Notes under the pieces: model-generated
What the model saw: the letters and a program-made list of their open reading frames with translations, nothing else
What the model was told of the DNA's origin: nothing
Database searches by the model: none
Origin: Diadema antillarum
Taxonomy: Eukaryota
Assembly (NCBI RefSeq): GCF_040938485.1
Contig: NW_027272283.1
Coordinates: 124,001-188,000 of the forward strand
DNA length: 64,000 nt
Direction of reading: 5' to 3'
In this document: positions 26,480 through 62,690 of the stretch, piece after piece
How positions within the stretch are numbered: the first letter of the stretch is position 1
Layout: each line of letters begins with the position of its first letter
Program-made: the position numbers and the translations under genes

Positions 26480-26605
26480 GTTTTAAATACTAACTTGTAG
26501 GTGAGTTTCTTCTGGGTGTACATCAACAGCCTGCTGAATCCACTTTGCTACGCTGCTGCTAACCGCACCTTTCGCCGCGTCATCGTGGGCTTCTTCAGGG
26601 GATGA
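20641..26605 (+). CDS. Class A (rhodopsin-like) GPCR, muscarinic/histamine-receptor-like, 535 aa; join(20641..22143,26501..26605)
   Basis: TM1 ANSL, TM2 ADLVIG, C3.25, D3.32 (IIDHV), AIDRY, ECL2 Cys, TM5 IIP, long ICL3 and TM6 FSWSPW lie in exon 1. A phase-0 GTAAGT donor at 22144 joins exon 2 (VSFFWVYINSLLNPLCYAAANRTFRRVIVGFFRG*), which supplies TM7 NPxxY and helix 8. AATAAA at 27193. Confidence 0.92.
25632..25914. mobile_element. Small palindromic MITE built of 15-bp GGTTCGTTATTCCGAA-type subrepeats, in the GPCR intron
   Basis: Direct subrepeats at the left, inverted copies (TTCGGAATAACGA) at the right, and imperfect CGG...CCG termini. Confidence 0.7.
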
Positions 26606-28591: not shown

Positions 28592-28637
<46 letters not shown>

Positions 28638-31600
28638 CATATATATGTACTGTCTATATTTATATATTTATATATTTACATATATCGTGAACTGAACATA
28701 AGCAACGATGTAGGTTTGCAATGAACTATTGGTAACTATATAAAAGATCATTGACACCATAGAGAGCTGTTTAGAAAATAACAGGAGACGGAGTTCTTAT
28801 CATTTAATTAGTGGAATTATGATAGAAAGTAATAATTGGATAGTATTTTCAGTCGGAATCATTCCGCTGAAAGCTAGAACGTGAAAAATATTGTCATATA
28901 AACATTATCGCGGTATCGTTATTTCACTTTCGAGTTCGGGCGAAGACGGATTACTGTTTTCAAAATAAATTGTCATCAACGTAGCAATTGCTTAAGTTTT
29001 GTTTGCGGTTTCCACGCAAAATGTTATGTAATTTCTAACATCGAGATAGATTTTATGGTGATACAGCAACTTCATTTCAGTACAAACAGGTAAAAAATTG
29101 CAGTCAGAATATATTTCCCATAGGAAAAGTATTGATCAGATGTTGTGCTCCTTAAGTATACGAGAAGTAACACAAAATAATGGAGTAAAAGCTCACCATG
29201 CTTTGGTGCTACCGTTCACTAATATGAACACAGTCTGTATATCCCGAGAAAGGTTCAGAGTAAGGTGAGGTTTTTTTTTTTTGGTTTTTGTTTTGTTTGT
29301 TTGTTTGTTTTTTTGGGGTGTTTGGCAACCGATTTTGGGACACAATTAACTGTCATCCAAAATGTTCCCCCTCCCCCATCCTAAAGATGAATCGAGATCC
29401 CTGTTCCCTATATAAACTTGGCCCCTCACGTTTAAAACGTAGCGCCGGCCCTGTGTATTACCATATTGAAGATTCTATAATGAAAGTCTTAGGCAATGGG
29501 GTCGAAGGTCGGAGTTAAAGGGTGAGGGGAAAATGGAAATATTTAACTTTTTCTCCAATACTCGGATATGGCTCAGGTATCTTCATGAAACTTTGTAGGC
29601 TTTATATGCATATACTGCCCGACAATGATTAATTTAAGAATTTGGGGTCATCGGTCAATGGTCAATGGTCAAAATCCAGGTTAGAATGTAAAATTCTACC
29701 ATTTGATGGTGAAATTAAACCTCTTCTAGATACCTTGGGTATTACCCAATGCATAAACTTAGTCATCCTATTAAAGCATATGCATGGTTTTCTGCACAAT
29801 GATTCTGTAGGAAAAGATTTTGGCCATGGGGTTAACCGTCAAGAGAAAATGCTAAAACGTCACAATTTTCCCCATGCTTTGAAAAATAGCTCAAATTATC
29901 GTTAGGAAATGTACATTACCAATGAAATATTGTGAGCCATGGAGTCTAAGGGTCAAGGGTCAAGTGAAATGCTAAATTTCCCAAATAATTCCTACTCTAA
30001 ACAATATAGCCATCCATCCAAACGCCGAATGAAACTATAGTTCAAGAAAAGTAAACACTCAACACTTTTGTAACAAACATGCAATTTCGATTTTTTGTTG
30101 TTGTTTTGTTTGTGAAGCTGACGTCTCACATTGTCAAGGAGTACTCTAGACTTACTGAAAGAACCATGCGACGTGGCCAGGAAATACCAGTCGCCATAGC
30201 AACATTTCTAATTCCCTTCTATAACAGGAGAGAATAACTCGCAGATAATTTCTTGAAACCTGCTAGCATTTTAACTAACTGCTTCGTCCAGTGTTTCCAT
30301 ATCGCTGATATTCTTCAGGACCAAATTCTGAATATTTTTTGGCCAAAATTCGGGCAAACTGTTTTTGTTTATTTTGCTTTGGTTTTGTTATTGATTTTTT
30401 TTTTTTTTTTTTTGCAGGGCCAAATTTATATATCCATTAATAGAGCTAGGTGTGTCTCCTATGGACAAGATATAATCATCTCATGAATGTGTGATGTCAT
30501 GGAAAATGATATTTATACCTCAATCTATATGATATGTAAGACTGTAATAGTGAAATGTTACGTAGTCGTACAGTACGTGGCAATTGAAGCCCTTTATCAT
30601 ACTAGACTTGCCACTTTTCATATGAATGTAATTGTTTAACCTTTATCATATTCTATGTAATAGCTTATCATCAGTTTGAAATCAGCAACGTAATCACTTT
30701 CATGTTGTCTGTCTATGAAAGTTGCAGAATCGGTATTTTTTATGTGTTCATGTTGTCAGGTCGTGAAAAATTAACCAGTTCAGGGTTCAGTGAAAATTCA
30801 GTGTGTATTTGCACGTATGTGTGTTCATGTGTCTGCGTTTGTGTGAGCTCGTACATGTGAATGGAACTTAATAGGGTAATGTGTCGAATACAATCAGGTT
30901 AGTCTTGTTAAATATGGAAAAGGACGTGGAAGGATAGATGACATTTTAAACTGTTGATTCTGGTTTGTTTGATGTTGTCGTTGTATTTCCAGACTGAAAT
31001 TCACTAGATATATAAAAGGTTTGTTCATTCCCTTTCTGGTTATATCGAGATGATCGTGTACGCCTAAAAGATATTTTGTTTTATCATTCATTTGATATGA
31101 GATTATTCACGTGAAATTGAGTAAGTCATAACATTTTTTTTTGTTTCAATAAGTGTGTACGTTTTATGTACGTGCACTTTTGCAGTGTACATACACAAGT
31201 GAATGGAATGGAAACATTAAGTATTACAGGAAAAGATCAAAATCGTGTTGCATTGGTGAATTTCGATGTATCATCTCATGCCTCTGAAGGTCTGTGTGTT
31301 CCTGTCGCATGCATTGTTAAAAAAATGTGCGTTATAATTGTGGGTATGTGCGTTTATTGTACTCGTGTATAGTATGTATGGTACATCTATATGATAGTCA
31401 GCAAAAACAGAAAGTAAACACATTTTTCGGAGTTCATGTTTTCATAGAAGACTTAGATGAAAATTAGTGTATTGTATACCATATCAAAGGTAATTTTATT
31501 GGCTATCAAGCTAGTGCATTAATACATAAAGACATTTCATGCATGAGTGAACACATTCATTTTTGCTCTCTATAAGGCACAAGGGTAAAGATGGCACAAA

Positions 31601-32485
31601 TTGCAAGTTGTCTTTCATTTGCAAATGCTCATCAAGAAAACACTGACAACGAAAGACCATGAATGAAATACTAAATTAAGTTTTCGTTCTCTTTATCTCT
31701 TTAACCTGAAACAAAAACAGAGCAGGAAACTATAGGGGGAAATAAGAATACCATGTCAACTCAACTTCAAATGATATAGAGAAAAGGCATAAAGATTATT
31801 ACATGAACAGAACAGAATTTCTTTTTTTATGCTATCAATTTGGTAATCTAAGAATTCATAACACAAACTTCAGAACCAAATATTTGCAGTTTTCCAAATT
31901 TGCGGAAAAACAATACAAATTTATATAGTTTTTGTTGACATTGGTTGATATTGATTCTTCTCTTATTCTATTGGAATCTCGATTTGACAGAAGAATCTTT
32001 ATTTTGTTCTATTATTTTAGCTTTCATTGATCTCTTTGGCTCTTAAGATATATAATAGAGATCATAGCTTTGTTTTTGCAAATGAACTCATTTTTCCTTT
32101 TGAAATTGTGTAAATGTGAAATTTGTCTCTTGTTCTTATTGTTATATATAAGAGCACTTATACATGAATGGCTTGTTCATTTTTGCAATTTTTACTTTTG
32201 TGCCTTTGAAGAGAAAAACAAAGATGTTCATTCATGCTTAATGTTTCCCTTTTTATTGACTTACCAGGTTTATTCTCAATTAAATTATTTTTGATACGGT
32301 ATAAAATACATTAACTTTCAGCAAGATACTATATGAACTTAAAAAGTTGTTTACTTTCCTCTTTTGCTGAGTGTATATGCATATATGTATTATATCACAT
32401 ACACACACACACACACACATATATGTATATATATATATATATATATAGGCCTCTGTATCTTTATGCATATGTATTATATAGGCAC

Positions 32486-32529
<44 letters not shown>

Positions 32530-33222
32530 CTGTTAGTCTGTCTATCTGTCTGTGCGCGCGCGCGCCCGCGTATCTTTATCTCTCAGCAAACGTTAATTTG
32601 AGCATCTTGGCAAGTGCGATAACTTCTCTGAAGAGACTTCATGCCCAAACATGTTGTTAACTAGCACGCTCAGTATTTCATTCTGACTTTATTGTTCAAA
32701 TGAGACAGTATACACAACCTGAGCATATCTTTTTCAGAAGTATTATCAAGGTAAAGACAAAGTCATAAATTATTTTCATAGGTTGAGCTAAACACAAGAG
32801 GAAAATCTCGAATTTGCCACGTCCACCCACTCACATCACAGATCATGAAGGACTTTGAGCTCCTTTTTCTCCGACAACGTCATGTGATTAAACCCATGCC
32901 CAAGATATCTTAAAAAGATTCTTTATACTTGATGTATTATATATCCTCATAACTGGTAGAGATACCAAAACCAATACTGTGTGCATTCTGCTTTTGACTT
33001 GTGTAAAGAGAAGGAACTACGTCATAAGCATTTCACATTGTTACTACTGTATCATATGACCATAAATATCATTGTTAAAAGTATCTTTTTTGTGCAGGCA
33101 AACGATTATAGAACATTAATTGATACATTATTTTTTCATTACTTGACGGACGCATCTGGGATCGAGTAAACATGCGAGTATTAAACATAAATGTATCGCG
33201 AATATAAGGCGTCAAACGGCAT

Positions 33223-35559
33223 CTAGACGCCCCTCTTCTTGCGGTCTCCTGCAGATGGTGCGTTCTGCTCTCGCTGTCGGCGTCTCTCTTCAGCCCTCCT
33301 CTGGAGGTACTCGGCTTCCTCTGGATCGGTTACCTGAAACACTTGACGCTTCATGCGATCCAGGACATTAGGTACAGCGGCATTGTCGACAGACCGTCTG
33401 TGAACGATGCTCTCGGCTTGACCACCACCACCGCCGCTTGGGATATTGACTGCAGGTCCTGGTGCCGGCTGGTTCTCGCCGTTACCGTTGTCGTCCGATC
33501 TCTTCACAACATGTGATCGCTGGCGATCCAGGTCCTTCGGCTTGGCGGCATTGTCGACAGACCGTCTGTGAACGATGCTGTTGGGGCCATCGCCAATTGG
33601 CAAATTGACTGCAGGTCCCGGTGTCGGCTGGTCTCCGCCATTGCCGTCGTTGCCAGATCTCTTCACAACGTGCGATATTCTTACTGAGTCGGGATCCGCA
33701 ATGCCATTGTGAGCGTTCCCTAATATAGGAAATTTAAAAGAATTAAACTATCATTAACCATAATAAATGAATAATTAAATAAACAAATGAATTTTTGAGA
33801 TGGAAATGTCATTATTTTTTTTGTATCTAGAATAATGCATATGATTATATGTGTATTTCTAAATGCATGTCAAGATAAATCGGATACAAGATCTCCGAAT
33901 GTGAACATACGCATGAAATATCGTTAAGATGACATAAGATCACGACAAAGTTAAACTGCTCTTTGTTAATGTTCCATCGACGGACGTCATTTAATCCTTG
34001 ATTGCCTGTGGGAAAATAGCAAGGTAAATATGCTTTGACTTGAAAAAAAACTTATTAGAGAGATCAAAATGAGGTTTAATGTATAACATAATAATTTGTA
34101 AATAAGATAAGACATTCTAGAGGGAGACGAACATCTAAATTTTCGATTCATTTCTGCATAATAGACAAACATCGTAAATTTCAGTTAAATTATGAGATGT
34201 CTTTTTAGGTAGGGAGGCACCAATAGACCAGTTTGTAGATAGTCAAATTAAAGTTTTGAACCATCAAAACAAAACAGCTGATAGATGTCACACACTTACA
34301 TGTACGTAAGGCAAGCTTACTTGTGTGTTAACAAGCTCCCTTGAATGCTTGCGTATGTTCTTTTACTGAAAAGAAACCATTCAGACCCGTCTATGACATT
34401 GCTCATTACAAATTTGTGTCTCATTACTTTGTTTTTCTCAGGATGACCTTTATCTGCTCATACGTAAAATACAACCCCAAAGTTTTTTATCCTTCCAAAT
34501 CCAAATAGTTTTTGGATGTCACGAAATCCCGCAACAATACTTATATCTTCGTCTTGGAGTAAATCTCTCCTTGGATCCCATCATGCCCATGGGAAGTATG
34601 ACGCATTTTGTCGTATAAATCTTTGATACATGTATTGCATTTAAGAGATAAGCTGTCTTTAACCCTTTCTAATTGGTGTAATCAATTTGATTTAAGAGTG
34701 ATGTACCCTTTTGGAGAAAGCTCAAGAATGGTGAAGACCGCATGCTTTTTCTTTCTCTCTCTCTCTCTGTTTTTTTTTAATAGAGTGGGTTACTGAAATG
34801 TATCAAGTTAGATGAAAATGGCGACTTTAGCCGTAAGAAGGCCTATGGCTAATGCGTTTTAATCAACAAGAACAGTTCTGATCTAAGTAAGATAATCAGT
34901 GATCAAAAATGCAATTATCAATGAAACCGTGGGAGTCAGAAAGTGGTAAGTGCTTCAGTCTTTAGACCTCACGACCGCACGTGGCACCCACCATATGCTA
35001 CTATAAGACCAACTACCTCCTATGACAGTACTGAAAATATTTATAAATCATTTCTGGTTAATGTCCGATTTGATATCTTTTAGTTAGCTCAATTTCCTCA
35101 TAATGAATAATAACTCTCTTTAACCAAGATAATAGAAATTCATCAATTTTTTGGAAGAAAAAGCATTAAACATGAAGTAACAAATGGCGACAAGGATCCA
35201 AATCATGCAAGTAAAGCACGTAAGAATTAATAACGTGACATTCAGATGTCCCCAGAAATATTTATGCCTATAAAGGGACACAACAAACGTCGTCTATATA
35301 CGTTCAGATCAATTTTTGTTTGAATGGAAAGAGAAGGTCTACACATTTTTTTTTTCACTGTGAAAGAAATATCATTATTTCTTCCATTTAGCAAATTTCA
35401 GACAAGGTTTCACACACCATAATCTGTTTGAAGCACACGTTCTTTTAACAACTTCTTAGGTGATTTATGGTGCGATAAAGCAACAAGAGGTTGACACTTA
35501 CCGTGTGCCCAACTGTGAAAAACAACCACAAAAATCGCCGCCCAAATCAGCTTGTCCAT
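33223..35559 (-). CDS. Secreted precursor A, 184 aa, multi-peptide precursor-like; join(minus 35559..35502, 33719..33223)
   Basis: The signal exon MDKLIWAAIFVVVFHSWAHG ends in a phase-1 GTAAGT donor. Acceptor TATTAG at 33720 continues in frame (58+497=555 nt) to a stop. Dibasic sites KR, RR, KR, RR, RMKR, RR, RRR and RKKR; internal ~55-aa duplication; AATAAA (minus) at 32688-32693. Confidence 0.85.
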
Positions 35560-35749
35560 TGCTGTCACGCCAGTGGACAGTTTCCAACTGACCCAAGCAA
35601 AGTTTGATCACTCCTTATGACTTTGATAAAAATGTCAATTAAGAACGTGTGCAATAAAATTTACTACACATCAGAAGTAGATCGTCACGCCCCACCATTG
35701 ATCTAAAAATGGCGCCTTTTTGGTGCTCCGCTGTATATGCATATTACCG

Positions 35750-37006
35750 ATGAATAAGATAGGTTCATTGATTTTTAGCGTTTGGTGTCTGACTGTGGTG
35801 TCTGCGACGACGACGTACGGGAGTAGGGCACGATGAAAATAAAAAAAAACAGGATGTAGACGATGAGGGACGATTAAAATAAGTGATTTTATTACATCAG
35901 TCATTGCATTTTTTTATATGTATGACGGATAACTCATATGCTATACTAAATATGAGGACTTGCAATTGTGACATTGATTTTAATGGTAGTCGTGTGTATT
36001 TGATTAATAATCATTATTAGTACAGGTGAAATGCCCACTATTGAAAGTGGCGGTAATGGTGATAGTAAGAAAAATAGCAGCAGCGGTAGTGATTTGTCGA
36101 TTCCTTACAGTAAGACAAGGTTTTGTATCTAAAAGAGGGACAACAAGCCTTGCAACCGAAAGCAGATCAATAAAATTATTAATGCTAAACTTGAACAGTT
36201 ATATATGAACTCTTCATATTTTACTGCTTAACGTACCCCTAATTCGCCACGTGTCTTTTCCACTTTATAAGGCAGTATACGCCTTCAATCTTATATAAAC
36301 TATTTCCTGGATAAGAACCAAAAAGCTCCTGCATAATCATTTAAATCATCTTGTCGTGTTTGGAAGATGCCATCGCTGAATTATCTTCGTCGTGTATACA
36401 TAGGAGAGTGTTGTAACACGGCGTTATGCATTTCCAAACACATTTAGAAATAGTCGCAGATGGTTACAATGCATAAAATGCCTAAAATGATACTGTTCAA
36501 AGCGGTGGTTTTAAATGGAGCGTTGCCCTTCCTAACCGTTCCGTGATAATGCGTCACTTTATGCGAACCCACCTGAAAAACGTAAATATTTCAACCGTGG
36601 GAAACTTTCTAGCAGAGCGTGCGCTCCAAATGGTTTCACACCTTTTTTTCCTTTCTGTTAACGGCTGTGAATAAAATTGCGTGAGGCATTGTTTGAAACT
36701 CTTTGGGTTTTATTGATCCAGGAAGGAACAATCATCGCAACATATTGCTCAAAATTATTTTGCACCATTTCCTACCTTTTGCTTTTGTTCCTCTGCAGAT
36801 GATGACCTTGTTCTCTTGACCGGTGAATAAGATTTTGCTAGGTCTCATTAGCTTAGCTGAATACAGTTTAATGTTGCAGTGACTCATCAGGAATGAAAAT
36901 TCAAGCATATGAAAAGTTTCTAATTATGTGCTGTCATTGGCAAGATCGTAATAAAGCCAGTAAATCGTTCACTAAACGGTTATTCTATAAGGCTCTATGG
37001 GAACAA
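35750..37006 (+). CDS. Candidate secreted micro-exon gene E (3' end undefined); join(35750..35822,36026..36109,36799..36822,36992..37006,...)
   Basis: Signal-like MNKIGSLIFSVWCLTVVSA, then three AG/GT-bounded exons of 84, 24 and 15 nt, all phase 1-1 and in frame (SEMPTIESGGNGDSKKNSSSGSDLSIPYNDDLVLLTGSMGT). The first donor (GTAGGG) and the 36025 acceptor are weak. Confidence 0.3.
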
Positions 37007-37860: not shown

Positions 37861-38623
37861 AAATGCAGATGCATCATAAACTTGATTTATGTGGAGTCAA
37901 GAATAGTGAGATAGGAATTTTTGAATAATTCTTCTTTCTCTAATTCTCCGGACTTCTGACAGTACATGCATTGTTGTTGTTGTTGTTGTTTTTTAAAGCA
38001 GTCACTGAGAGGGAGACGCCTATTAGTAACTTGCGTCTGCGTCAAATTGTTCAAGATTTGCTTATTTTCTTTCTTTTTTTTTCAAAAGCCTTGACAAATA
38101 TATATAATGTAACTGATGTATAGCAGTCAAGGAAGTACTTTTGTTTTTGTTTCTGTGGGGTTTTTTTTTTCTCCCGAAATAATTTCCCCATGCAAATGAA
38201 TAAATATTTCAAGCATTGTAAGACTTTTCTCATTCCAATACGATCTTACGATCTACATTATGATGAACTACATGGAAATAGGATGTTAACAAAAAGCAAC
38301 AGAAGAGACAAGATAGCACACTCACTCAACTCATGATAAAGATCTTTGGTTATGGCTGTGTGTGTTAATACAGCGGAATTAAAACATGCTCATTGCATTT
38401 TCCTTTTTTTTTGAGGCATGGTTTTTTTTTTTTTTTTTTTTTTGATGGCATAGTTGATACAGCCTCCCATTTCCAGACCACAGTTTGTTTTTTTTTTTTT
38501 TTTTTTTTTTTTTTATAGAAGCAGCTGATAGCCCCATTTTCTCCCACTGGTAGCAGTCGGCCAGGAAGAATACCAACACTCTCATCCGAAGGCACGCATG
38601 TCTCCTCAACATACTCACTTAAA

Positions 38624-39590
38624 GGATCCACACTCCAAGGTATCCACACTCCAAGGTATAACACTCCATGGCATCCACACACTAGGACATCCACACTACA
38701 AGGTATCCACACTCCAAGGTATCCACACTCCAAGGTACCCACACACCAAGGTATCCACACTCCAAGATAGCCACACTCCAAGGCATCCACACACCAAGGC
38801 ATCCACATTCCAAAGCACCTTACTCCAATGCCTTCAACCAAAGTATCCACACTCCAAGGTATCCACACTCCATGGCATCACTACTCCATGGCATCACTAC
38901 TCCAAGGTATCCACACTCCAAGGTATCCACACTTCAAGGTATCAACACTCTAAGGTATCCACACTCTGTGACATCACTACTCCAAGGTATCCACACTCTG
39001 TGACATCACTACTCCAAGGTAACCACATTCCAAGGTATCCACACTTCAAGGTATTCACACTCAATGGCATCCAAACATCAAGGTCTCCACACTCTAAGAT
39101 ATCCACACTCCAAGGTATCCACACTCCATGGCATCCACACTCCAAGGTATCCACATTCCAAGGTATCCACGCTCCGTGGCATCCACACTCCAAGGTATTC
39201 ACACTCCAAGGTATCCACACTTCAAGGTATTCACACTCCATGGCATCCACACTCCTAGGTATCCACACTCCAAGGTATCCACACTCCGAGGTATCCACAT
39301 ACCAGGGTATCTAAACTCCAAGGCATCTACACACCAAGGTATCCACACTCCAAGGTATCCACACTCTATTATAAGGCATCCACACTCCCAGGTATCCACA
39401 CTCCAAGGCATCCACACTCCCAGGTATCCACACTACAAGGCATCCACATTCTACACACTCAAAGTTATTCATACCAAGGAGGTTCATACGCCATGGCATC
39501 CACTCTGCAATGCATCCATACTCCAATGCCGTAATTATCCAAGGCATTCACACTCCAAGGCATCCACTCTCCAAGTGATTTACACTTCAA
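38624..39590. repeat. 16-bp minisatellite, consensus GGTATCCACACTCCAA (~60 degenerate units)
   Basis: Directly visible tandem array. The unit has no stop codon in any frame, which explains the overlapping His/Trp-rich ORFs. Confidence 0.95.
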
Positions 39591-45318: not shown

Positions 45319-45361
<43 letters not shown>

Positions 45362-45964
45362 TATATAATTTGTAACGGGAATATTCAGGCCGAGCAGATA
45401 AGTATATGCCGATGTGACCATAACCATTGGTGTGCGTGTGCGTGTGTGTGTGAATGGATGTCTGATGGAGCCTGACAGATGTACAGTATGGTTACAGCTG
45501 GACAGTCCGACTGCTATGGTCTAGTTTCACTTGCTATGCTGAGAAATATCGATTTCAACATTGCTAAACTTGAGTTCTGCCAAGTCCAAGGCCGTTGTCC
45601 TTTTGTCAGGTTTAGATAAGATATATTTCACACATTCTGATATGATTTTTCGTGCCAGTCCGTACCAGAAAGTTTCGTAGTCTCATTCTTCCAGCCATTT
45701 GTAACTGTCTTGCAAAAGCCCGTACAAAGCAAGTCCTGGCACGACGTGCGTCATTATACCAGGTAATTTGCACGAACGAGTGCGATGGAGTCTAAGTTTG
45801 AAACTGCTGAAGCAGTTAAGAGGACAACTTAAAGACTGAACTGTTTCAACAGCATTCACAACGGCTTAGTCCACTTCCAAATGTAAACTGTTCTGCAGCC
45901 CTTGTCGTTTCTTTTTCCGACGCTTTGCTGATTGTGCAGGAGTCTGGTCATTTCGCAGTTCACT

Positions 45965-48900
45965 ATGGGCAGACGGGCCGCTAGTCTCGTCTGCCTTCTT
46001 ATGGCGGTAATCTGCGTTCAATACGGTGAGAAGTCTGTGCATTATTCAACCAACTTATATCTCACTGCACTCTTTATGCTATATTATACAGGGTTTGACA
46101 TTGACTTCTTTCTGTGGTGGTCCGTTTGGGACACTAAAATCTATGAATACGAAATGTTGGTGGCCTAAATGAAATGAAAAAAAAAAACATTATATATATA
46201 AAGTATATGTATTATATAAACAAGATCATTCCTTATTTTAATAGCCCAATCGGGCCACCAAAAGAGATTTGGAAGCCAGGCGTGATTTTTAGTGACCTCC
46301 GGATCGGCGAGTCCTCCTGTAATGTATACTAGTGCTCTCGAAAAGTTTGCGAAATCCTACAGCTTAAACACAGCATCTGTAATGAGAAATTTGATATCTC
46401 AGATCAGTCATAGATCAGTTCGTAAGTTCCACTTTGCTCCGAAGTAGAGAAAGACAATTTGTACTGACAGGCATTTTGGTTTGTAAATTCACCGAGATAA
46501 GCATCTGTGTTATGATGATTATTCATGTTAATTGTGTGGCTTTTGAGTGTCATTCGGAACCCTTTAAACATTAGAAGAGTTGGCCACTGTAAGCCCCCTA
46601 AAATTTTATCGCCTTTAACATGTTTTACAAAGAAAAATGTCCGTTGCGTAAAGAGGGGCAATATATTGGATTTTTATTATGCATCCACTTCTTGCATCTG
46701 TAAAACAAATCTACCGACTACTACTGAACGAAAATATACATACAGCCTGTAACAATGTCATACACATTCAAGTGTCACACAGGAAATCAAGTTGAGACCA
46801 TTCCCTTTCTGTCGGGCAAATAATAGTGTTCAACTCCGTTGCACAATTCATATTCTGATTCTTAACTGCCATTGTCATATCCCTTATGATACCTTGCCAA
46901 AGTGTGCACAACATGATAACCATTACGTGTATTATTCTCTACCCCTTCACATCGTTACTCTCACCTAGGAGTGTGTAAAATTGCACCGAACATCAACAAT
47001 CCGCCTCGGATGAATGGCCTCCTCGTTGACGAAAGTCCACACGGGCCCGAGCTGTCCCGAGATCGCAGGGAGTCCGACGACGCCCTAGAAAGTGACCGGG
47101 GAGATGTGCCTCTCTTGAAGAATGCCAACGTTCACCAGGTTTACGAGCGTGCTGTGGATACTGTTGTGAGCAGAATCAGGAAACGCTCCACAGATGAAGC
47201 AGCTGTTGCATTGAAAGAGGCTGCAGATGCAGAAATGGTCTTCAATGAAGAGGAAAACAATGCTGGACCGTTACTTCGAAGAGTGAGGCGGGAACCAATG
47301 AGAAAGAGCAGGAATCGGAATAGGGTGGCGAAGGCGAAGGCGAAGAAGAACAATAAGAAGCGAAAGGGGAAGAAGTCTGGCAAAAAGAAATCTGCAGGAA
47401 AAAAGAAGTCTAACAAGAAATCTAACAAGAAAGCTTCAAAAAAGAAAGCTGCCAAAAAGAAAGCTTCGAAAAAGAAAGCTTCAAAAAAGAAAGCGTCCAA
47501 AAAGAAAGCGTCCAAAAAGAAAAGCTCCAGAAGAAACTCTCGGAAGAAATCGCCGAAGAGGAAACCAAAGCCTAAGCCAGTTATGAAAAAGCCGCCACCT
47601 GTCGTCCAATCAAGTATTGCACCAAGGTTTCGTGGCTTGAAGGGGTTTAGGCCCAAGTTCATTGTGTGCATTCTTGAAGCTTTGCTGGACGACGACGGGA
47701 ACGGCACACTGGCGGAGGTCATGATGAAACATTCGATGATGAATAAGACGATGAACTCCATGATGAATAAGACGATGGACTCCATGATGAACACTACTAT
47801 GAACAATACCATGACTGGCAAGTTATCAATGCATGCACTGCGCAACCTGATTTCTCTGCTCCGTTCGAATTATGGATCAAATAACACCCTACCAAATCTG
47901 AAAGTGCTCTTAAGCGATGAGTCCTCTATGAACTCTTCTATAAACTTTCCCTATTGGTTCACCAAAAAATTCAATGTACCACCCAAGGGGAAGCTTCGCC
48001 ATCAACTTCTGCTCCAACACATTTTCTCGTGGTTCTACGAGGAAGGGGACGATGACGTGGGTGAGCTCCTGAAATTCATGAAACGAAAGTCTCAAGATGT
48101 ATCCTCGATGACCGCCAATATGACAATGATGGATCTGAAGGAGAAAAAGGGGGAAAAGGTATCCGAAGAATGCCCTGATTTGATCTCGGAATTCCTAAGT
48201 GAGATGGACGAAGTGGTGGCCTTTGGTCTCTTTGACTCTTTGCAACGTGGATTAATGGCCCTTTATTCTGGCGACCTTAAGACCCTGCTACACATCTTCT
48301 TTGACGAGTCCGATAAATCCTTGGAGCTTCTGTACTACATGAAACACATGCGCGAAGAAAACGAATGTATGAGTTCATCCATCTTGCTTTCATGCATCTT
48401 CGAAAGTCTGCTTGACGAAGATTTTGCAGAGGATATCATTATGTACCTCGGCCCCTATCTCAGCATGTACCGTATGTACGGCAATGAGACCAATGGGACT
48501 AACGGGAACATGTCCATGATGGGAATGAACGTCTCAATGTCGGAAGAAGTGGAGCGGTGGGTGTATGATGCGATGTCATCAAATTATTCCTCGATGTATT
48601 CCTCCAACATTACGGACTCTGATTTCTGCGAGATGGAGAGAATGGACCCGAAGATGATGCTCGAAAACATGATGAATGAATCGATGATGGATCAGCAGAT
48701 GATGATGGAAATGTTGATGAACCTGTCAATGATGAATGAAATGGACATGGAGAAGACTATCATGAACATGTCAGCAGATATTCCTGTCATGAAAATGATG
48801 AAAAAGATGATGATGTTCAAGAAGAAGATGATGATGGGGAAAAACAGAAAGATGATGAAAGATGACATGGAATGTAGGCCCATGAACAAGATGATGACCA

Positions 48901-49709
48901 CTATGATGAATCATTCCATGATGATGAACAATATGTCAGGAAACCCAATGAAGGCAATGATTGGGATGATGAAGAAGATGATGATGATGAATGACTCAAT
49001 GATGATGAACTCTTCAGGGATGAACAACATGACCGAAGACTCGATGTACATGAAAATGGGAATGATGATGATGATGAAGATGATGAAGATGATGGATGAT
49101 CCGATGAATGATACCATGATGATGGATTCCTCTATGCCTGGGTCCATGAAGAAGCCATTTATGAAGAAGAATCCATTCATGTATCATTCGCTTTTCCACC
49201 ATCTGACCAAAGACTTCAAACATTATCTTGCAAAACTCGTCCACAAATTCATCCGGTACGCAATTCATTTCGCTGAAGAAGACGACTTTGATATGATGAT
49301 CAGTCACTTCGTGGAAGCTACGATGCACGGCATGTCTCTGGAGGACATGCTTGACGAAATGGGCAACTCTTCGATGTCGGAAACGATGATGATGATGAAT
49401 GGCACAGACGAAGGCATGATGAACTCGATGATGAACTCGACGATGAGCGACAACAGCACGATGCTCCACAACTATCTGGAAGGAATCGACATCCTTGACA
49501 AGGTCTGTCCTTCCGTCGTCATGGACTACCTGCCGAAGATGAAACTTCGAAACGTCATGCGACTCGTCCGTAAACTCATGTGGGCTAGCAAGTTCCTTCT
49601 GTGTGGCGACATGGACGGCTGGATGATGGCGATTATGATGAATGAGAGGCCAATGAAGTCGATGATGATGATGGACAACGAGCCAATGGATATCATAGGA
49701 ATGTGGTAA
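45965..49709 (+). CDS. Secreted Lys-block/Met-rich glycoprotein precursor C, 933 aa; join(45965..46025,46969..49709)
   Basis: The signal exon MGRRAASLVCLLMAVICVQY ends in a phase-1 GTGAG donor and joins acceptor CACCTAG at 46968; 61+2741=2802 nt, open to TAA. Furin-type sites RDRR, RIRKR and RRVRR; KKASK repeats; Met-rich blocks; many N-x-S/T sequons. An acceptor at 45938 implies an upstream UTR exon; AATAAA at 50002. Confidence 0.92.
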
Positions 49710-52067
49710 TAGTAAGGTTACTATGTTGTACAAGTGTCATATTGATTTTCGGCTTTTCCTTTGGTTTTCTTTGATAGTTTATCCGATTCTGAGATCTTAG
49801 ACGTTGTACATGTAATTTCTATCACAGTTATCAGTTGAGGGAAACTCTCAGTTTCTATTGTATTCCTAGCAAGACGCTGTTTTTCCGCCTACTTAATTTT
49901 AATTTCAATGTCAATTTATTTTCATATTTCTCGATGAAAAAATACATCAAATATAACAAAACTAAATGAGATACATGACATACATAGAATATTGCAAATA
50001 TAATAAACATAATAGTGGTCGATCTGTTAAGTTTGGAATCTGTGAATGAATGCTAAAGATATATGAAGGAACCTACTTAAAAGCGAGCTTGTTGAGCGTA
50101 GGTCCCTGTTAAAAACGAGTTTAAGATTGAGAAGGGGAGTACAACAATGACCGGAACATAAGAGAAAAACAAAATAAAAAAGTACAATGATACAGTTATA
50201 TAGCAAATTCTTCTCTAGCGCAGGTTAGGGGTCGGAAAAACCACATACTGTAGGCGGATGAACCATTGTCGTTCTGGCAATACAATATGACTTAATATAT
50301 AATAACAATGATACCGTTTAGACAGTATTAGAAATGTTTACCGTTTAGACAGTATTAGAAAATTAATTTCGAAGGCATAGATTACTCTTCGTCATTTTAA
50401 TGTCACCAGAACATGATTTCAGAGATGATTATTAAGATGTATTCTCGCTTCTCGCATTGCAGAGTCAAGATTCTCGCCTTGATATTGAGAGAGCGTTTGA
50501 ATGACATCCTACTTCCTGATTTCTAGATCTTTATATGCTTACAATGTCAAAATGCATCCGAGTGTGAAGATTGTATGCACTGAATCCAATTACTGTTGGT
50601 ATTTCGTTTCACTTAATTACCAAACATAATTATGTTACGTAGCAATGGCTTACCTCTATATATTGACAGTGACTTTATCACTGCAAATTTTTTTTTTTTT
50701 TTTTTTTGTCTGCCTAGCAGAAGGGCTCTACCACGAAATTTCACCCCAAATCAAAATTTTGTTCCTGACATGCGTTGACAGAGTTTTGAAACTCTTCCAT
50801 ATGAAATCATTATTTTTTCGGTGATTTTTGGAGCTGGCAGGCATTGCATTTTACAATGGCATTCGAACTGCATATGTCAAACGATACTTCGATAATCTTT
50901 AACTGTATATGATATGGAATAGCATGTAGCATCATTCCAATACTAAAAATATTGTGAATCTTGCATATCCAGCGTTTGATAGGCGTTTGATAGAACCCTA
51001 CTGAACCATAGGCTATGTTATGCTTGTATTGGGTATTTTGCTGTTGCTGCAATGATTGTATTTACGAGCTCATTCATTCTAGAGTGGCTTGATTCTCTCC
51101 CCATCTTGCCTCTGTATACTTTAACAGATATCTGACGACCATCAATTTTTTTCTCGATATATCCAGTAGTTGAACGTAAGTAGGAATGGTACCTTCAATT
51201 ATAGTTTGAAGTAGAACATATCTTAACGGTTGCTTTAAGACTTATATACTTAAGTATCAAAGTAGCCTATTTCTGTTGTGCACCATCAAAATGGCAAAGC
51301 CTGTGAATGCTACCATTCAATCTTACTAAAATTTCCGAAATTGTTAATACATATGCTTTAAAATTTTAATTCGTCTTCAATGTACTGTTACAAAATATCA
51401 CAAGTAAATGATATTTTTGTGCAGATTCTTTTTTCTTAAACACAAGCGCTTTGTGAGGTTATAAGTAGTGGGGCAATAATCTGTGATATAGTTCTGACAT
51501 GTGTCTACAATCGTTTCGCATTGATTCTTGTCCTACGGCTTGTCTCCTATAGTTTCTCTAACACCTTTCTTCCCGCATGCACATTTATATCATTCATTGA
51601 ATGATACTCACAAAGAAAAAGAAGAAAATTTCATGCACACAACAAAAGTTACACGTGTAACCTAAGGTGAAGGATCTACGAACAGGACTCCGTATTAGGA
51701 TATTTCTGAATTGACTTCGATATATCTAATTAAATCTTTATTGGTGGTTGGTGAGTAAAAATTGTTGCTCTGTGTTATGTGTTACTCTTGACTGTGTCAG
51801 TTATCACTCCAGAGTTTGATTCAAGTAATAATAATAGAGAAGAATAGAGAGGTACAAATCGCAGACGTGTCGATAGGATCTAACTCGTTAGATGCCAAGA
51901 AGACGTGAAGAAAGGCGATGTGAAAAAGAATCAAACCTACATACAACGGCACAAAGCAAAGTACATATTGAGATAGGCCAGAAGAAAAAAGAAATAGTGG
52001 GTAGCTGAGAAGTGTTATTCCTCTTACTGTTCTTAATTTTGTTTAAAAAAAAGCTGGTTGATAAATT

Positions 52068-59439: not shown

Positions 59440-60969
59440 TACCATAAGCCTAGGGACCACAAAAAGGGACCCCGAAAAATGGATTTATTCAGCCGAAGGG
59501 GGTCACGGACAAAAGTTGGTGGCTATTGTTCCTTTGGGTGTACTTATCATGAAAACAGCAATGCCAGCTATTTTATCCTGTACGGGGCCCCAGACAGTAG
59601 CCCCAAAGGGCCCCACAAATATGGTGTTATTCAGCTGAAAAGGGTCACGGCCAATTTCTTTTGCAATGGAAGTAGTTCCCATCAGAGATATCCAAAACAC
59701 CCATGCCAGCTATTTTATCCTGTACGAGGCCCCAGACAGTAGCCCCAAAGGGCCCCACCCCCATAGGCCCTACGTACAAACACACACAAACATTGATTTC
59801 ATTCAGTTAAAAAGAGTAACGGCTAATTTCTTTTGCAATGGAAGTAGTTCCCATCAGAGATATCCAAAACACCAATGCCAGCTATTTCATCCTGTACGGG
59901 GCCCCAGACAGTAGCCCCAAAGTGCCCCACCCCCATAGGCCATACGTACAAACACACACAAACATTGATTTTATTCGTGCAGCTGAGAAGAGTCACGGCT
60001 AATTTCTTTTGCAATGGAAGGAGTACCCATCAGAGATATCAAAAACGTCAAAGCCAGCTATCTTATCCAGTAAGGGGCCCCTGACAGTAGCCCCAAAGGA
60101 GCCCCCCCCCCCCCCCGGCACACACGCACATATAGTTTCATTCAGCTAAAAAGGGTCACGGCTAATTTCTTTTGCAATGGAAGTAGAACCCATCAGAGAT
60201 ATCCAAAATACCAAAGCCAGTTATTTCATCCTGCACGGGGCCCCAGACAGTAGCCCAAAATGCCCCCTCCCCCTCCCCCCCCCCCCCCCCACACACACAC
60301 ACACCTTGATTTTATTCAGCTGAAAAGGGTCACGGCTAATTTCTTGTGCAATTTAAGTGGTACTCATCAGAGATATCCAAAACACCAAAGCCAGCTATTA
60401 TCCTGTACGGGACCCCAGACAGTAGCCCCAAAGTGCCCCCCCCCCCCACACACACACACACGCACACACACGCACATTACTTTCATTCAGCTGAAAAGGG
60501 TCACGGTTAATTTCTTTTGCAATGGAAGTAGTACCCATCATATCCAAAATACCAAAGCCAGCTATTTTATCCTGTACGGGGCCCCAGTCAGTATAGCCCC
60601 AAATTGCTCCCTCCCCCCCCCCCCCTCCCCCACATACACACATTGATTTTATTCTGCTGAAAAGGGTCATGGCTACTTTCTTTTGCAATCGGAAGTAGTA
60701 GGCATACTCATCAGAGATATCCAAAACACTAAAGCTAGTTATCTTATCCTGTACGGGGCCCACACAGTAGCCCCAAAGTGCACCCCTACACACACACACA
60801 CACGCACACACACACATTAGTTTCATTCAGCCACAAAGGGTTACGGCTAATTTCTTTTGCAATGGAAGTATAAATAGTACCCATCAGAGATGTCCAAAGC
60901 ACCAAAGCCAGTTATTTTATCCTGTACGGGGCCCCAGACAGTAGCCCCAAAGTGCCCCCCCCCCCCTCT

Positions 60970-61019
<50 letters not shown>

Positions 61020-61648: not shown

Positions 61649-62690
61649 GTTTCCCAGCCAATTTCGCACTTTTGTCGGTTCATTTGATAGAAGGTTCGAA
61701 TTCGTAAAATGGGTATTCAAATTGGCTGGTACCATACGTTCATTCAAATTCGCCTTGACTTGCCGAAAAGAGTATTTCAGTCATTAAATTTCGCGAAAGA
61801 CAGTCAAATTCCAAACGTGTTCATTCAAATTCAAATCATGCTATTTCTGTGTTTCAGATCATTTTAACGGGTTTTTCTATGTGTGTTTTCGTTTCATCTT
61901 TAAATTACTGTTAAAAAGCAGTAAAAGTATCATATTTCTTATCTAGTATAACTGGATTTGGTTGTTCTGTAACCAGACTGGTAACGCTCCTTCTCTTTCA
62001 TATACATGTCATTATAGGCCTATACGTGTACCAGTAATGCAGATTAACTTCATTTTTTATAGTCATGACAGCACAATAGATACAGACATAATACAACTAT
62101 ATCTCTAGAAGACATAGAAAGAATTATTTAAAAAAAAATTGAGGATCATAACCTTGACTTCCTGGAACTGACCGACCGCTCGTAATAAAGCGCTCGTAAC
62201 GGCCAGATAATTTGTGGCTTCTTACTTCTTCGGATTCAAAAAGCACGTTAAAAAAAAATGGTGTCAAAGTCTCTTAAACGAATGCGAAAACATGAAAAGC
62301 TATGATGCTTAAAAAACAATAACTACGATGAAAGAAAATAAGGAAAGAGGTCAAACATGAACATATCTGTTTAATTGACTGCAGAACATGCTAAATTAGA
62401 TGGCCAGAAATCAATTTGAATGAACGAGCGCAGCATGTGATCACGTGACTATATCATTATGAATTTATGAATGAACGGATAGTGGAATGGTGCTTGTCTT
62501 ATATATGGATTTCAGTTGAAAAAAGTGTTATTCAGAATAAGGTTTGAGGTAATGTGAATGTTTCAAAATGAATTTGAATGAAGAGATTATGACATTGAAC
62601 TACCATGTCATCTAGGCGAAATTTTTGCTAAATTTAATTCAACATTAAATAATTCGATTAAAAGAGGTGCGAAATTGGCCCGGATGCAGG
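61649..62690. mobile_element. Probable MITE insertion splitting the last satellite unit
   Basis: The satellite stops at CAAAGCCAGTTA and resumes near GGGCC..GACAGGTATAGCCCC. The insert has inverted subterminal GCCAATTTCGCAC / GTGCGAAATTGGC and CAAATTC subrepeats. Confidence 0.45.

What the first reader, a model, noticed from the sequence alone, without database searches (positions are those of the whole stretch)
45965..49709. 933-aa secreted block-copolymer protein with an extreme Met-rich domain
Seen: signal peptide, two acidic pro-segments bounded by RIRKR and RRVRR, a ~100-aa Lys-rich block, a helical acidic/aromatic region, then Met-rich blocks. By hand count, 73 of 184 residues (~40%) encoded at 48630-49182 are Met, with runs up to M5. 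Known: Met-rich segments bind Cu(I)/Ag(I), scavenge oxidants through reversible sulfoxide formation, and occur in some shell-matrix and storage proteins. Inference: a redox- or metal-responsive secreted material protein with no domain I recognise.
Basis: partly seen in the sequence, partly recalled or inferred. Interest (0 to 1): 0.8.

Follow-up and report, generated by a model that had tools for sequence, protein, structure and literature searches.

The report
Orphan methionine-rich secreted sea-urchin protein
A Diadema sea-urchin gene encodes a 933-residue, apparently secreted and heavily sugar-coated protein with a lysine-rich block and a stretch that is 40% methionine; nothing like it is in any database searched, and its function is unknown.

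Summary
Exon 1 (45965-46025) and exon 2 (46969-49709) join in phase through GT..AG sites to give 933 aa. There are 146 Met (15.6%), and 73 of 184 residues are Met at 48630-49181, with one M5 run. The open frame of 929 codons is the longest in the window.

Secretion could not be tested with RNA or protein data. It is supported by a classic signal peptide, no other hydrophobic span, two R-x-R-R sites, and 27 N-glycosylation sequons against about 6 expected. All 27 lie after the Lys-rich block.

The Met-rich part is not a decaying ATG microsatellite, and three diverged internal modules share one motif.

No relative was found by Pfam, two word searches, an exhaustive phmmer of 1.84 billion representatives, PDB or ESM Atlas. 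A neighbouring receptor gene served as positive control and hit Diadema setosum at 92%. That annotation misses another neighbouring orphan gene, so a missing hit does not show a missing gene. Structure models were unusable (pLDDT about 35).

Classic Cu(I) MxM/MxxM spacings are depleted.

The scan has noted other Met-rich proteins elsewhere in this genome, but not this sequence.

The parts
45965..46025 (+). Coding exon 1: Met1 to the first base of codon 21. It encodes the signal peptide (n-region MGRR, hydrophobic core aa 5-18, c-region QYG).
   Evidence: Sequence read, translation, hydropathy, Kozak context and donor ACG|GTGAGA.
46026..46968 (+). Intron of 943 nt, GT..AG, phase 1, with a pyrimidine-rich tract before the acceptor.
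   Evidence: TAA at 46917-46919 closes the exon-2 frame upstream of the acceptor.
46969..49709 (+). Coding exon 2 (aa 21-933 plus the stop TAA, followed by TAG TAA).
46971..47186 (+). Pro-segment 1, aa 22-93, net charge 0. It contains RDRR (51-54) and ends in RIRKR (89-93).
47187..47291 (+). Pro-segment 2, aa 94-128, net -3. It ends in RRVRR (124-128), a canonical R-x-R-R convertase site.
47292..47654 (+). Polycationic block, aa 129-249: 47 Lys and 12 Arg against 1 acidic residue, net +58, pI 12.0. It includes a 15-nt tandem array (KKASK unit, 6.4 copies, 91% match) at 47427-47522. It has no sequons.
47655..48629 (+). Acidic, aromatic region predicted to be helical, aa 250-574, net -19, with 14 sequons. 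It contains repeat module A (aa 250-306) and module B (aa 492-548).
   Evidence: The helix calls come from low-confidence models only.
48630..49181 (+). Met-rich core, aa 575-758: 73 Met of 184 (40%), 22 Lys, 17 Asn, 9 sequons. It is not amphipathic beyond chance.
49182..49706 (+). C-terminal region, aa 759-933. It holds the two strongest amphipathic helices (about aa 766-791 and 874-898), repeat module C (aa 800-856) and a Met-rich tail. There is no C-terminal hydrophobic anchor.
50002..50007 (+). First AATAAA after the stop (293 nt downstream), a candidate polyadenylation signal.
   Evidence: Motif only; usage not shown.

Best explanation
This is an intact, lineage-restricted gene of a Diadema sea urchin. 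It encodes a soluble protein of the secretory pathway.

Shown from the sequence:
- Two coding exons are joined by canonical sites.
- There is an N-terminal signal peptide and no other membrane span.
- There are three multibasic sites.
- A 121-residue polycation (+58) is followed by 684 acidic residues (net -25, pI 5.15). These contain 140 Met and 27 N-glycosylation sequons.
- That region is built from at least three diverged copies of one module: an acidic motif [LF]E.[LM]LD[DE], a GN.[ST] motif present in two of the three copies, and MMN.[ST] repeats.

Inferred:
- After signal-peptide removal, proprotein convertases cut at RDRR54, RIRKR93 and RRVRR128.
- This exposes the polycation at the N-terminus of an approximately 94-kDa (unglycosylated) mature chain.
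- The chain is heavily N-glycosylated, and the glycans with the interspersed Lys/Asn/Asp/Ser keep a 40%-Met chain soluble.

Most likely role (a guess):
- It is a component of an extracellular matrix or a secretory granule.
- The polycation binds polyanions, such as sulfated glycans or the protein's own acidic part.
- The flexible thioether-rich core acts as a sacrificial or switchable target for oxidants. Met to Met-sulfoxide conversion changes the core from hydrophobic to polar.
- It may secondarily act as a low-affinity sink for soft metals.

Odds: about 0.8 that it is a real gene for a secreted glycoprotein, and about 0.3 that the oxidant-reactive matrix or granule role is right.
For: Coding:
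- The frame is 929 codons open, against 552 or fewer elsewhere in the window.
- Splice sites are canonical and in phase.
- The Met core is not neutral ATG-repeat decay. Of its 111 non-Met codons, only 5 are the I/L/V one-step neighbours of ATG. The three transition neighbours GTG, ACG and ATA are all absent. There are 17 AAG Lys, 17 Asn, 12 Asp and 12 Ser codons.

Secretory route:
- Signal-peptide hydropathy is present and no other hydrophobic span exists.
- There are 27 sequons against 6.4 +/- 2.3 in shuffles of aa 250-933 (0 of 2000 shuffles reach it).
- 27 of 50 Asn after aa 250 sit in sequons, against 0 of 16 before it.
- M-N-x-[ST] occurs 15 times against 1.3 expected.
- RDRR and RVRR fit R-x-[KR]-R.

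Modular build:
- Module A against C gives Smith-Waterman z = 7.9, and A against B z = 5.0, versus composition shuffles.
- The three-way alignment has 11 invariant columns.

Flexible core with folded flanks:
- Helical hydrophobic moment z is -0.2 in the core, +2.4 for aa 250-575 and +3.6 for aa 758-933.

Charge blocks.

Chemistry by analogy:
- H2O2 oxidation of a Met-rich low-complexity domain melts Pbp1 condensates (PMC8394241).
- Met-rich regions mark insoluble extracellular scaffold proteins of Pinctada (PMC7591529).
Against: - There is no RNA, protein or orthologue evidence. The only runs holding the DNA are not on record as RNA. They hold equal shares (0.26-0.27), which looks like low-coverage DNA.
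- The splice junction is therefore predicted, not observed.
- Part of the sequon and MMN excess comes from short tandem duplications (24-nt and 12-nt arrays at 47736-47814 and 49416-49446). By my hand count from the positions, about 22 sequons lie outside them.
- The pro-segments are nearly neutral (net 0 and -3). They cannot mask the polycation, so their role is unclear.
- No methionine sulfoxide reductase is known to me to act outside cells here, so 'reversible' oxidation is doubtful.
- AlphaFold2 models have pLDDT 35-36, so 'helical' and 'flexible' rest on weak indicators.
- Nothing ties the gene to any tissue or matrix.
Confidence: 0.4

Rival explanations
1. Extracellular Cu(I)/Ag(I) 'sponge'. 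The Met-rich core binds soft metal ions through clusters of three thioethers, as in the Ctr1 ectodomain or the Met-rich domain of CueO. It would buffer or hand over copper outside the cell.
For: The core has 73 thioethers in 184 residues, in an oxidising compartment where Met is the preferred Cu(I) ligand. Many weak Met sites in a flexible domain are thought to act as a copper sponge (PMC11840665). The core is non-amphipathic and probably flexible.
Against: MxM (21) and MxxM (20) are fewer than in composition-matched shuffles (28.4 +/- 3.3 and 28.3 +/- 3.2; about 99% of shuffles reach or exceed the observed count). There is one His and one Cys in the core. No copper transporter, oxidase or chaperone domain is attached (Pfam none). 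The hypothesis does not explain the polycation or the dense glycosylation.
Confidence: 0.12
2. Insoluble scaffold protein of the calcite skeleton (test, spine or tooth). It would be a functional analogue of the Met-rich insoluble matrix proteins of the pearl oyster (NU-5, LMP).
For: Sea urchins are calcifiers. In Pinctada almost all acid- and detergent-insoluble matrix proteins share a Met-rich region, often alongside acidic regions. NU-5 knock-down disturbs nacre (PMC7591529). Here too a Met-rich region is combined with acidic stretches in a secreted orphan protein.
Against: There is no sequence similarity to anything. No Pfam domain of any kind was found, so none of the C-type lectin domain that I recall in sea-urchin SM30/SM50-type proteins. 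S-x-[ED] phosphorylation motifs are not enriched (8 against 8.7). Gly is only 4.4%, unlike abductin. I found no report of Met-rich echinoderm matrix proteins.
Confidence: 0.12
3. Precursor whose active product is the polycation. This could be a host-defence or polyanion-condensing peptide released by convertases. The Met-rich part would be a carrier or a separate product.
For: The multibasic sites RDRR, RIRKR and RRVRR lie directly upstream of a +58 block. Further R-x-x-R and K-R sites lie inside the block (sequence). A neighbouring gene in the window is also a convertase-type precursor.
Against: No convertase motif separates the polycation from the 684-residue remainder. The block is not amphipathic (z = -1.7), unlike helical antimicrobial peptides. 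This reading leaves 73% of the protein, with its repeated modules and sequons, without a role.
Confidence: 0.08
4. Methionine (sulfur amino acid) reserve. It would be deposited in eggs or nutritive cells, like the Met-rich seed storage proteins of plants.
For: The Met content is extreme (15.6% overall, 40% in the core). It enters the secretory route, as many storage proteins do.
Against: No precedent in echinoderms known to me or found. It is a single gene with no paralogue in the window. The elaborate block architecture and convertase sites are not needed for storage.
Confidence: 0.05
5. Not a working gene as modelled. The ORF may be untranscribed, exon 1 may not be used (translation from Met35 would give a cytosolic protein), or it may be a young gene with no settled function.
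For: There is no expression evidence. There is no homologue in 1.84 billion representatives, although D. setosum and Lytechinus proteins are in the databases. Models have low confidence.
Against: A 929-codon open frame in DNA of about 40% GC is far beyond chance. The signal peptide sits exactly before an in-phase donor. Sequons are enriched fourfold and only in the presumed mature part. Codon content of the core is non-neutral. The D. setosum annotation also misses the conserved neighbouring precursor gene, so a missing hit is weak evidence.
Confidence: 0.08

Closest known systems
[quoted passage not shown]
   Same: They are secreted orphan proteins of a marine calcifier with no conserved domain. 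They combine a Met-rich low-complexity region with acidic regions, and self-association is proposed for them.
   Different: There is no sequence similarity. The oyster proteins are Glu/Ser/Gln/Pro-rich around the Met regions. They are not described with a polycationic block or with sequon-interleaved MMN.[ST] repeats. Matrix localisation is shown for them and unknown here.
Abductin (scallop hinge-ligament elastomer)
   Same: It is a secreted, Met-rich material protein (from my own knowledge of the literature; it appears among the hits).
   Different: Abductin is a short Gly/Met/Phe repeat polymer. This protein has 4.4% Gly, no long regular repeat, and amphipathic helical flanks with Cys.
Cu(I)-binding Met-rich segments (Ctr1 ectodomain, CueO Met-rich domain, CopC/PcoC, CusF; PMC11840665)
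   Same: They have many thioethers in a flexible segment located in an oxidising, extracytoplasmic compartment.
   Different: Those segments have 10-20 Met, usually with His, and are attached to a transporter, oxidase or chaperone fold. Here there are 73 Met and 1 His, MxM/MxxM spacings are depleted, no copper-related domain is present, and N-glycosylation is dense.
Met-rich low-complexity domain of yeast Pbp1/ataxin-2 (PMC8394241)
   Same: It is a low-complexity, Met-dependent self-associating segment whose oxidation by H2O2 dissolves the assembly.
   Different: Pbp1 is cytosolic and is reset by methionine sulfoxide reductases. This protein is extracellular and glycosylated, with far higher Met density and no homology.
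Convertase-processed secretory precursors in general
   Same: They have a signal peptide, pro-segments ending in multibasic motifs (R-x-[KR]-R) and a basic product downstream.
   Different: The 'product' here is an 805-residue low-complexity glycoprotein, not a set of small peptides. Cleavage is predicted only.

Membership tests
Any Pfam family | Match to a curated profile at or near the gathering score | tested here: not met
   hmmscan of the 912-aa exon-2 product found 0 families even at E<=1.
Cu(I) 'Mets-motif' proteins (Ctr1 ectodomain, CueO/CopC/PcoC-type Met-rich segments) | Clustered MxM / MxxM(xxM) spacings beyond what composition gives | tested here: not met
   The core has 21 MxM and 20 MxxM, against 28.4 +/- 3.3 and 28.3 +/- 3.2 in 2000 shuffles. 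That is a depletion.
Cu(I) 'Mets-motif' proteins | Attachment to a copper transporter, multicopper oxidase or cupredoxin-like chaperone fold, often with His alongside Met | tested here: not met
   No domain found, no PDB relative, and 1 His in the 184-residue core.
Cu(I) 'Mets-motif' proteins | Measured Cu(I)/Ag(I) binding | not testable with these tools
   Needs recombinant protein with competition assays or ICP-MS.
Mollusc Met-rich matrix proteins (NU-5, LMP) and abductin | Sequence homology to a described member | tested here: not met
   Exhaustive phmmer of aa 240-933 found 0 hits at E<=0.001 in 1.84 billion representatives. The word searches also found none.
Mollusc Met-rich matrix proteins (NU-5, LMP) and abductin | Secreted protein with a Met-rich low-complexity region plus acidic regions (compositional class) | tested here: met
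   Signal peptide present, 40% Met core, and aa 250-933 has net charge -25 and pI 5.15.
Mollusc Met-rich matrix proteins (NU-5, LMP) and abductin | Presence in the insoluble organic matrix of a biomineral or ligament | not testable with these tools
   Needs proteomics of Diadema test, spine and tooth matrix.
Sea-urchin spicule matrix proteins (SM30/SM50 type) | C-type lectin domain with Pro/Gly-rich repeats (defining feature recalled from my own knowledge) | tested here: not met
   No Pfam family of any kind matched, so no lectin domain. Pro is 3.8% and Gly 4.4%.
Acidic phosphoprotein matrix proteins (Fam20C substrates) | Enrichment of S-x-E/D sites | tested here: not met
   8 sites observed against 8.7 +/- 2.7 expected.
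Met-rich prion-like low-complexity domains (Pbp1/ataxin-2 type) | Cytosolic RNA-binding protein context (Lsm/LsmAD, PAM2) | tested here: not met
   No such domains. The signal peptide and sequon excess point to the secretory route.
Met-rich prion-like low-complexity domains (Pbp1/ataxin-2 type) | Oxidation-reversible phase separation | not testable with these tools
   Needs recombinant protein with H2O2 and Msr treatment.
Proprotein-convertase substrates of the secretory pathway | N-terminal signal peptide | tested here: met
   n-region MGRR, a 14-residue hydrophobic core and small residues near aa 17-21. Hydropathy peaks at 3.4 over 11 residues. No dedicated predictor was available.
Proprotein-convertase substrates of the secretory pathway | R-x-[KR]-R cleavage motifs at segment borders | tested here: met
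   RDRR 51-54 and RVRR 125-128 match. RIRKR 89-93 is a K-R dibasic site with Arg at P3 and P5, not the strict motif.
Proprotein-convertase substrates of the secretory pathway | Cleavage observed | not testable with these tools
   Needs N-terminal sequencing or mass spectrometry of the native protein.

The most novel reading that the evidence does not exclude
The Lys-rich and Met-rich blocks may be the two reactive partners of a self-cross-linking extracellular material. A secreted haem peroxidase (peroxidasin- or ovoperoxidase-like), using H2O2 and the abundant bromide of sea water, would make hypobromous acid. This would convert Met thioethers into halosulfonium ions that are captured by Lys amines as sulfilimine (S=N) bonds. 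That is the chemistry known so far only from a single Met-Hyl pair in collagen IV (PMC5377774; the idea is also raised for oyster proteins in PMC7591529). Here, with 140 Met and about 100 Lys per chain, it would give a densely cross-linked glycoprotein gel or coat. Where no amine is near, the same oxidant would give Met sulfoxide, switching the chain from hydrophobic to polar.
Probability: 0.05. Interest if true: 0.85.

Novelty: new variant of a known kind. Interest (0 to 1): 0.45.

Why it matters
If the gene is expressed, this is to my knowledge among the most methionine-dense natural polypeptide segments described. It has 40% Met over 184 residues, against roughly 20-27% in the Met-richest seed storage proteins that I recall. 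It also sits in a secreted, glycan-studded chain tied to a +58 polycation.

It would be a natural test case for three questions:
- What do extracellular thioethers do: oxidant sink, oxidation switch, soft-metal sponge or cross-link donor?
- How is a hydrophobic poly-Met chain kept soluble?
- How are new low-complexity secreted proteins built by module duplication?

Earlier notes of this scan report several other Met-rich extracellular segments in the same genome (unchecked by me). A shared physiological reason in Diadema or in sea urchins generally would be the more interesting finding.

As it stands it is one unverified orphan gene with no expression data, so the value is that of a well-defined lead.

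Tried and rejected
- Homology. Nothing was found by Pfam, the word-index search on aa 241-581 (exon-2 residues 220-560) and on the pro-region, exhaustive phmmer of aa 240-933, ESM Atlas on the whole and on two parts or PDB sequences. The PDB gave only chance hits at E about 0.1.
- Paralogues in the window. tblastn found none, only Lys-run noise at 38.4 kb.
- Structure. AlphaFold2 single-sequence models of aa 240-933 and aa 306-575 had mean pLDDT 35.4 and 36.3. I ran no fold search, because matches to such models are meaningless.
- Orthologue. I fetched the syntenic D. setosum locus through the neighbouring GPCR. It ends at window position 36648, 9.3 kb short of the gene. No called gene lies beyond it to walk from. 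An exact-product look-up of the Met35-start ORF found nothing.
- 'Acidic propiece masks the polycation'. Rejected: the pro-segments are net 0 and -3 against +58.
- 'Decayed ATG microsatellite'. Rejected on codon content.
- 'Amphipathic Met helix as in SRP54'. Not supported: core hydrophobic moment z = -0.2.
- The antisense His-rich ORF 49014-49733 and the other minus-strand ORFs are mirror images of the ATG-rich coding strand, not genes.
- Literature. No report of Met-rich echinoderm proteins turned up.
Full report
WHAT IS THERE

The window is eukaryotic DNA of about 32-47% GC.

The finding sits on the longest open frame of the window. It is 929 codons stop-to-stop. The neighbouring GPCR has 552, and everything else in six frames has 260 or fewer.

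- The ATG is at 45965, in a good context (A at -3, G at +4).
- The donor is ACG|GTGAGA after 46025.
- A 943-nt intron follows.
- The acceptor is a pyrimidine-rich ...TCTCACCTAG|G before 46969.
- The phase is 1.
- The exon-2 frame is closed by TAA at 46917-46919. It can therefore be entered only by this splice or at the internal Met35.
- The frame ends in TAA TAG TAA at 49707.
- An AATAAA lies at 50002.

A CAG|GTAATT at about 45762 and a ...TGTGCAG|G at 45939 could mark a further non-coding 5' exon. That is unsupported speculation.

THE PROTEIN

It has 933 aa, with 146 Met (15.6%), 103 Lys, 87 Ser, 66 Asn and 11 Cys.

48630-49182 gives 184 residues with 73 Met and an M5 run at aa 719-723.

The blocks are as follows:
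- aa 1-21: signal peptide. The eight most hydrophobic 19-residue windows of the protein all lie here, so no other membrane span and no GPI-type tail is evident.
- aa 22-93 and 94-128: pro-segments, rich in D/E but net 0 and -3. They carry RDRR54, RIRKR93 and RRVRR128.
- aa 129-249: polycation, net +58, pI 12.0. Part of it is a recent 15-nt (KKASK) array.
- aa 250-574: acidic and aromatic region, net -19.
- aa 575-758: Met core.
- aa 759-933: C-terminal region with the two strongest amphipathic helices and more Met runs.
- aa 250-933 taken together has pI 5.15.

WHY I TAKE IT FOR A REAL, SECRETED GLYCOPROTEIN

1. Frame length and splice geometry, as above.

2. N-glycosylation sequons.
   - There are 27 N-x-[ST] sites.
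   - Shuffles give 7.8 +/- 2.5 for the whole protein (maximum 18 of 2000) and 6.4 +/- 2.3 for aa 250-933 (0 of 2000 reach 27).
   - 27 of the 50 Asn after aa 250 are in sequons. None of the 16 Asn before it are.
   - The excess holds in each of the three sub-regions (14 against 3.9; 9 against 1.5; 4 against 1.0).
   - The recurrent unit is M(M)-N-x-[ST], seen 15 times against 1.3 expected.
   - Such an excess has no reason to exist in a cytosolic protein.
   - Caveat: about five of the sites lie in short tandem arrays, so they are not all independent.

3. The Met core is not a decaying (ATG)n microsatellite.
   - Six of the nine one-step neighbours of ATG encode Ile, Leu or Val. The three transition neighbours are GTG, ACG and ATA.
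   - Among the 111 non-Met codons of the core, only five are I/L/V neighbours, and GTG, ACG and ATA are all absent.
   - AAG Lys (17), Asn (17), Asp (12) and Ser (12) dominate.
   - The filling residues are thus polar by selection, as needed to keep a 40%-Met chain in solution.
   - ATG repeats are not a property of the surrounding DNA.

4. Internal modules.
   - aa 250-306, 492-548 and 800-856 share the motifs [LF]E.[LM]LD[DE], [AS]E and repeated MN.[ST]M; GN.[ST] is present in two of the three.
   - Smith-Waterman z is 7.9 for A against C and 5.0 for A against B, versus shuffles.
   - The three-way alignment has 11 invariant columns.
   - The protein therefore grew by duplication of a module made of an acidic helix and a glyco-Met stretch.

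SHAPE

The core shows no helical amphipathicity beyond chance (z = -0.2). The flanks do (z = +2.4 and +3.6).

AlphaFold2 without an alignment gives all-helix models at pLDDT 35-36. These are unusable, so no fold search was run.

RELATIVES

None was found:
- Pfam: 0 families at E<=1.
- Word-index searches on the helical region and the pro-region: none.
- Exhaustive phmmer of aa 240-933 against 1.84 billion representatives: 0 hits at E<=0.001.
- ESM Atlas: no usable hit, three tries.
- PDB: chance-level only.

Positive control. The GPCR ORF at 20641-22218 hits a Diadema setosum protein at 92% identity and a Lytechinus pictus protein at 40%. So the window is from a Diadema species other than D. 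setosum, and echinoid proteomes are in the database.

Limit of the negative. The syntenic D. setosum locus (L001) matches window 18391-36648 at about 79-89% nucleotide identity. Only the GPCR is a called gene there. Yet the last exon of the window's 'Precursor A' is conserved in it at 78% amino-acid identity. The D. setosum annotation thus misses small orphan secreted genes. The lack of a D. setosum hit for the present protein is therefore no evidence that the gene is absent there.

L001 stops 9.3 kb short of the gene, and I found no way to fetch further. What can be said is this: no detectable relative exists outside Diadema among annotated proteins, and the state in D. setosum is unknown.

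EXPRESSION

There is no evidence either way.
- Three runs of one study hold 26-27% of the sampled words. None is on record as RNA, and the equal shares suggest low-coverage DNA.
- One was a BLAST of L001 against it, which produced no alignment there.
- The N run at 18613-18775 was left alone.

HOW IT MOST LIKELY WORKS

Shown: the block anatomy described above.

Inferred:
- ER entry and signal-peptide removal.
- Dense N-glycosylation of aa 265-849.
- Convertase cleavage at one or more of R54, R93 and R128. This would leave a mature chain whose N-terminus is the polycation.
- The polycation (+58) and the acidic remainder (-25) make the chain a block polyampholyte. It can bind polyanions such as sulfated glycans, or its own kind.
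- The Met core is a flexible, glycan-solubilised array of thioethers.

My best guess is a matrix or secretory-granule component whose core is consumed or switched by oxidants. Met to Met-sulfoxide conversion turns hydrophobic side chains polar. The documented model is the Met-rich low-complexity domain of yeast Pbp1, whose condensates melt on H2O2 (PMC8394241). I put this functional reading at about 0.3. The statement 'real secreted glycoprotein gene' I put at about 0.8.

RIVALS

- Copper sponge (PMC11840665). This is chemically reasonable. However, the classic MxM/MxxM spacings are depleted relative to shuffles, His is nearly absent, and no copper-related domain is attached.
- Biomineral scaffold. 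The Met-rich insoluble matrix proteins of Pinctada (PMC7591529) are the nearest described analogues by composition. There is no homology, no Pfam domain of any kind and no excess of S-x-[ED] sites.
- Polycation as the active product. No cleavage motif separates it from the rest, and it is not amphipathic.
- Met storage. No precedent was found.
- Non-functional ORF. This is hard to square with the frame length, the sequon pattern and the codon content.

MOST NOVEL READING NOT EXCLUDED

The Lys and Met blocks could be partners for peroxidase/HOBr-made sulfilimine cross-links. This is the collagen IV chemistry (PMC5377774), here in bromide-rich sea water. I give it about 5%.

VERDICT

'Secreted' and 'no known domain' are supported. 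'Redox/metal-responsive material' is untested, and the metal-motif test is weakly negative.
- It is a lineage-restricted orphan that belongs by composition, not by descent, to the loose class of secreted Met-rich low-complexity proteins. I rate it a new variant of a known kind.
- Earlier notes of this scan list other Met-rich segments in other genes of this genome. A sequence look-up found no look-alike of this one.
- Interest is moderate (0.45). The composition is extreme and the anatomy clean, but there is no expression, orthologue or functional evidence.

Noticed in passing
window 20641-22221 (+): A 526-codon single-exon ORF for a muscarinic-type GPCR with a very long third intracellular loop. 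It is 92% identical to a Diadema setosum protein over 75% of its length and 40% identical to a Lytechinus pictus gar-2-like receptor. The D. setosum gene model spans 7 kb with introns, so the C-terminal end of the window ORF probably continues in a further exon.
   Followed up: partly
Both copies of its duplicated peptide cassette align to a single segment of the D. setosum locus at 71-78% amino-acid identity. The cassette duplication may therefore be specific to this species. No gene is called there in the D. setosum record.
   Followed up: partly
window 38622-39448: A minisatellite of a 16-bp unit (AAGGTATCCACACTCC), about 52 copies at 78% match, in a 2-kb bin with strong GC skew (-0.35). 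It produces long spurious ORFs on both strands (238, 167 and 164 aa).
   Followed up: partly
window 59629-60994: A satellite of a 172-bp unit, about 8 copies at 80% match, separated by (CA)n and poly-C runs. It accounts for the GC-skew dip at 60-62 kb and for several repetitive ORFs.
   Followed up: no
window 61695-62684 and L001 12615-13597: A 1-kb stretch near the end of the window matches, at 73%, a segment inside the intron of the D. setosum GPCR gene. The match is out of synteny, so it is presumably a dispersed repeat.
   Followed up: no
window 18613-18775: A run of 163 N (assembly gap or masked stretch), left untouched. Synteny with D. setosum continues on both sides of it (L001 7709-7940 and 8065 onward).
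   Followed up: no
window 45320-45363 and 44.9-45.4 kb: (TA)n/(TATATA) microsatellites about 600 bp upstream of the start codon. They give 'YIYIYI' ORFs on the minus strand and are not a TATA box in any meaningful sense.
   Followed up: no
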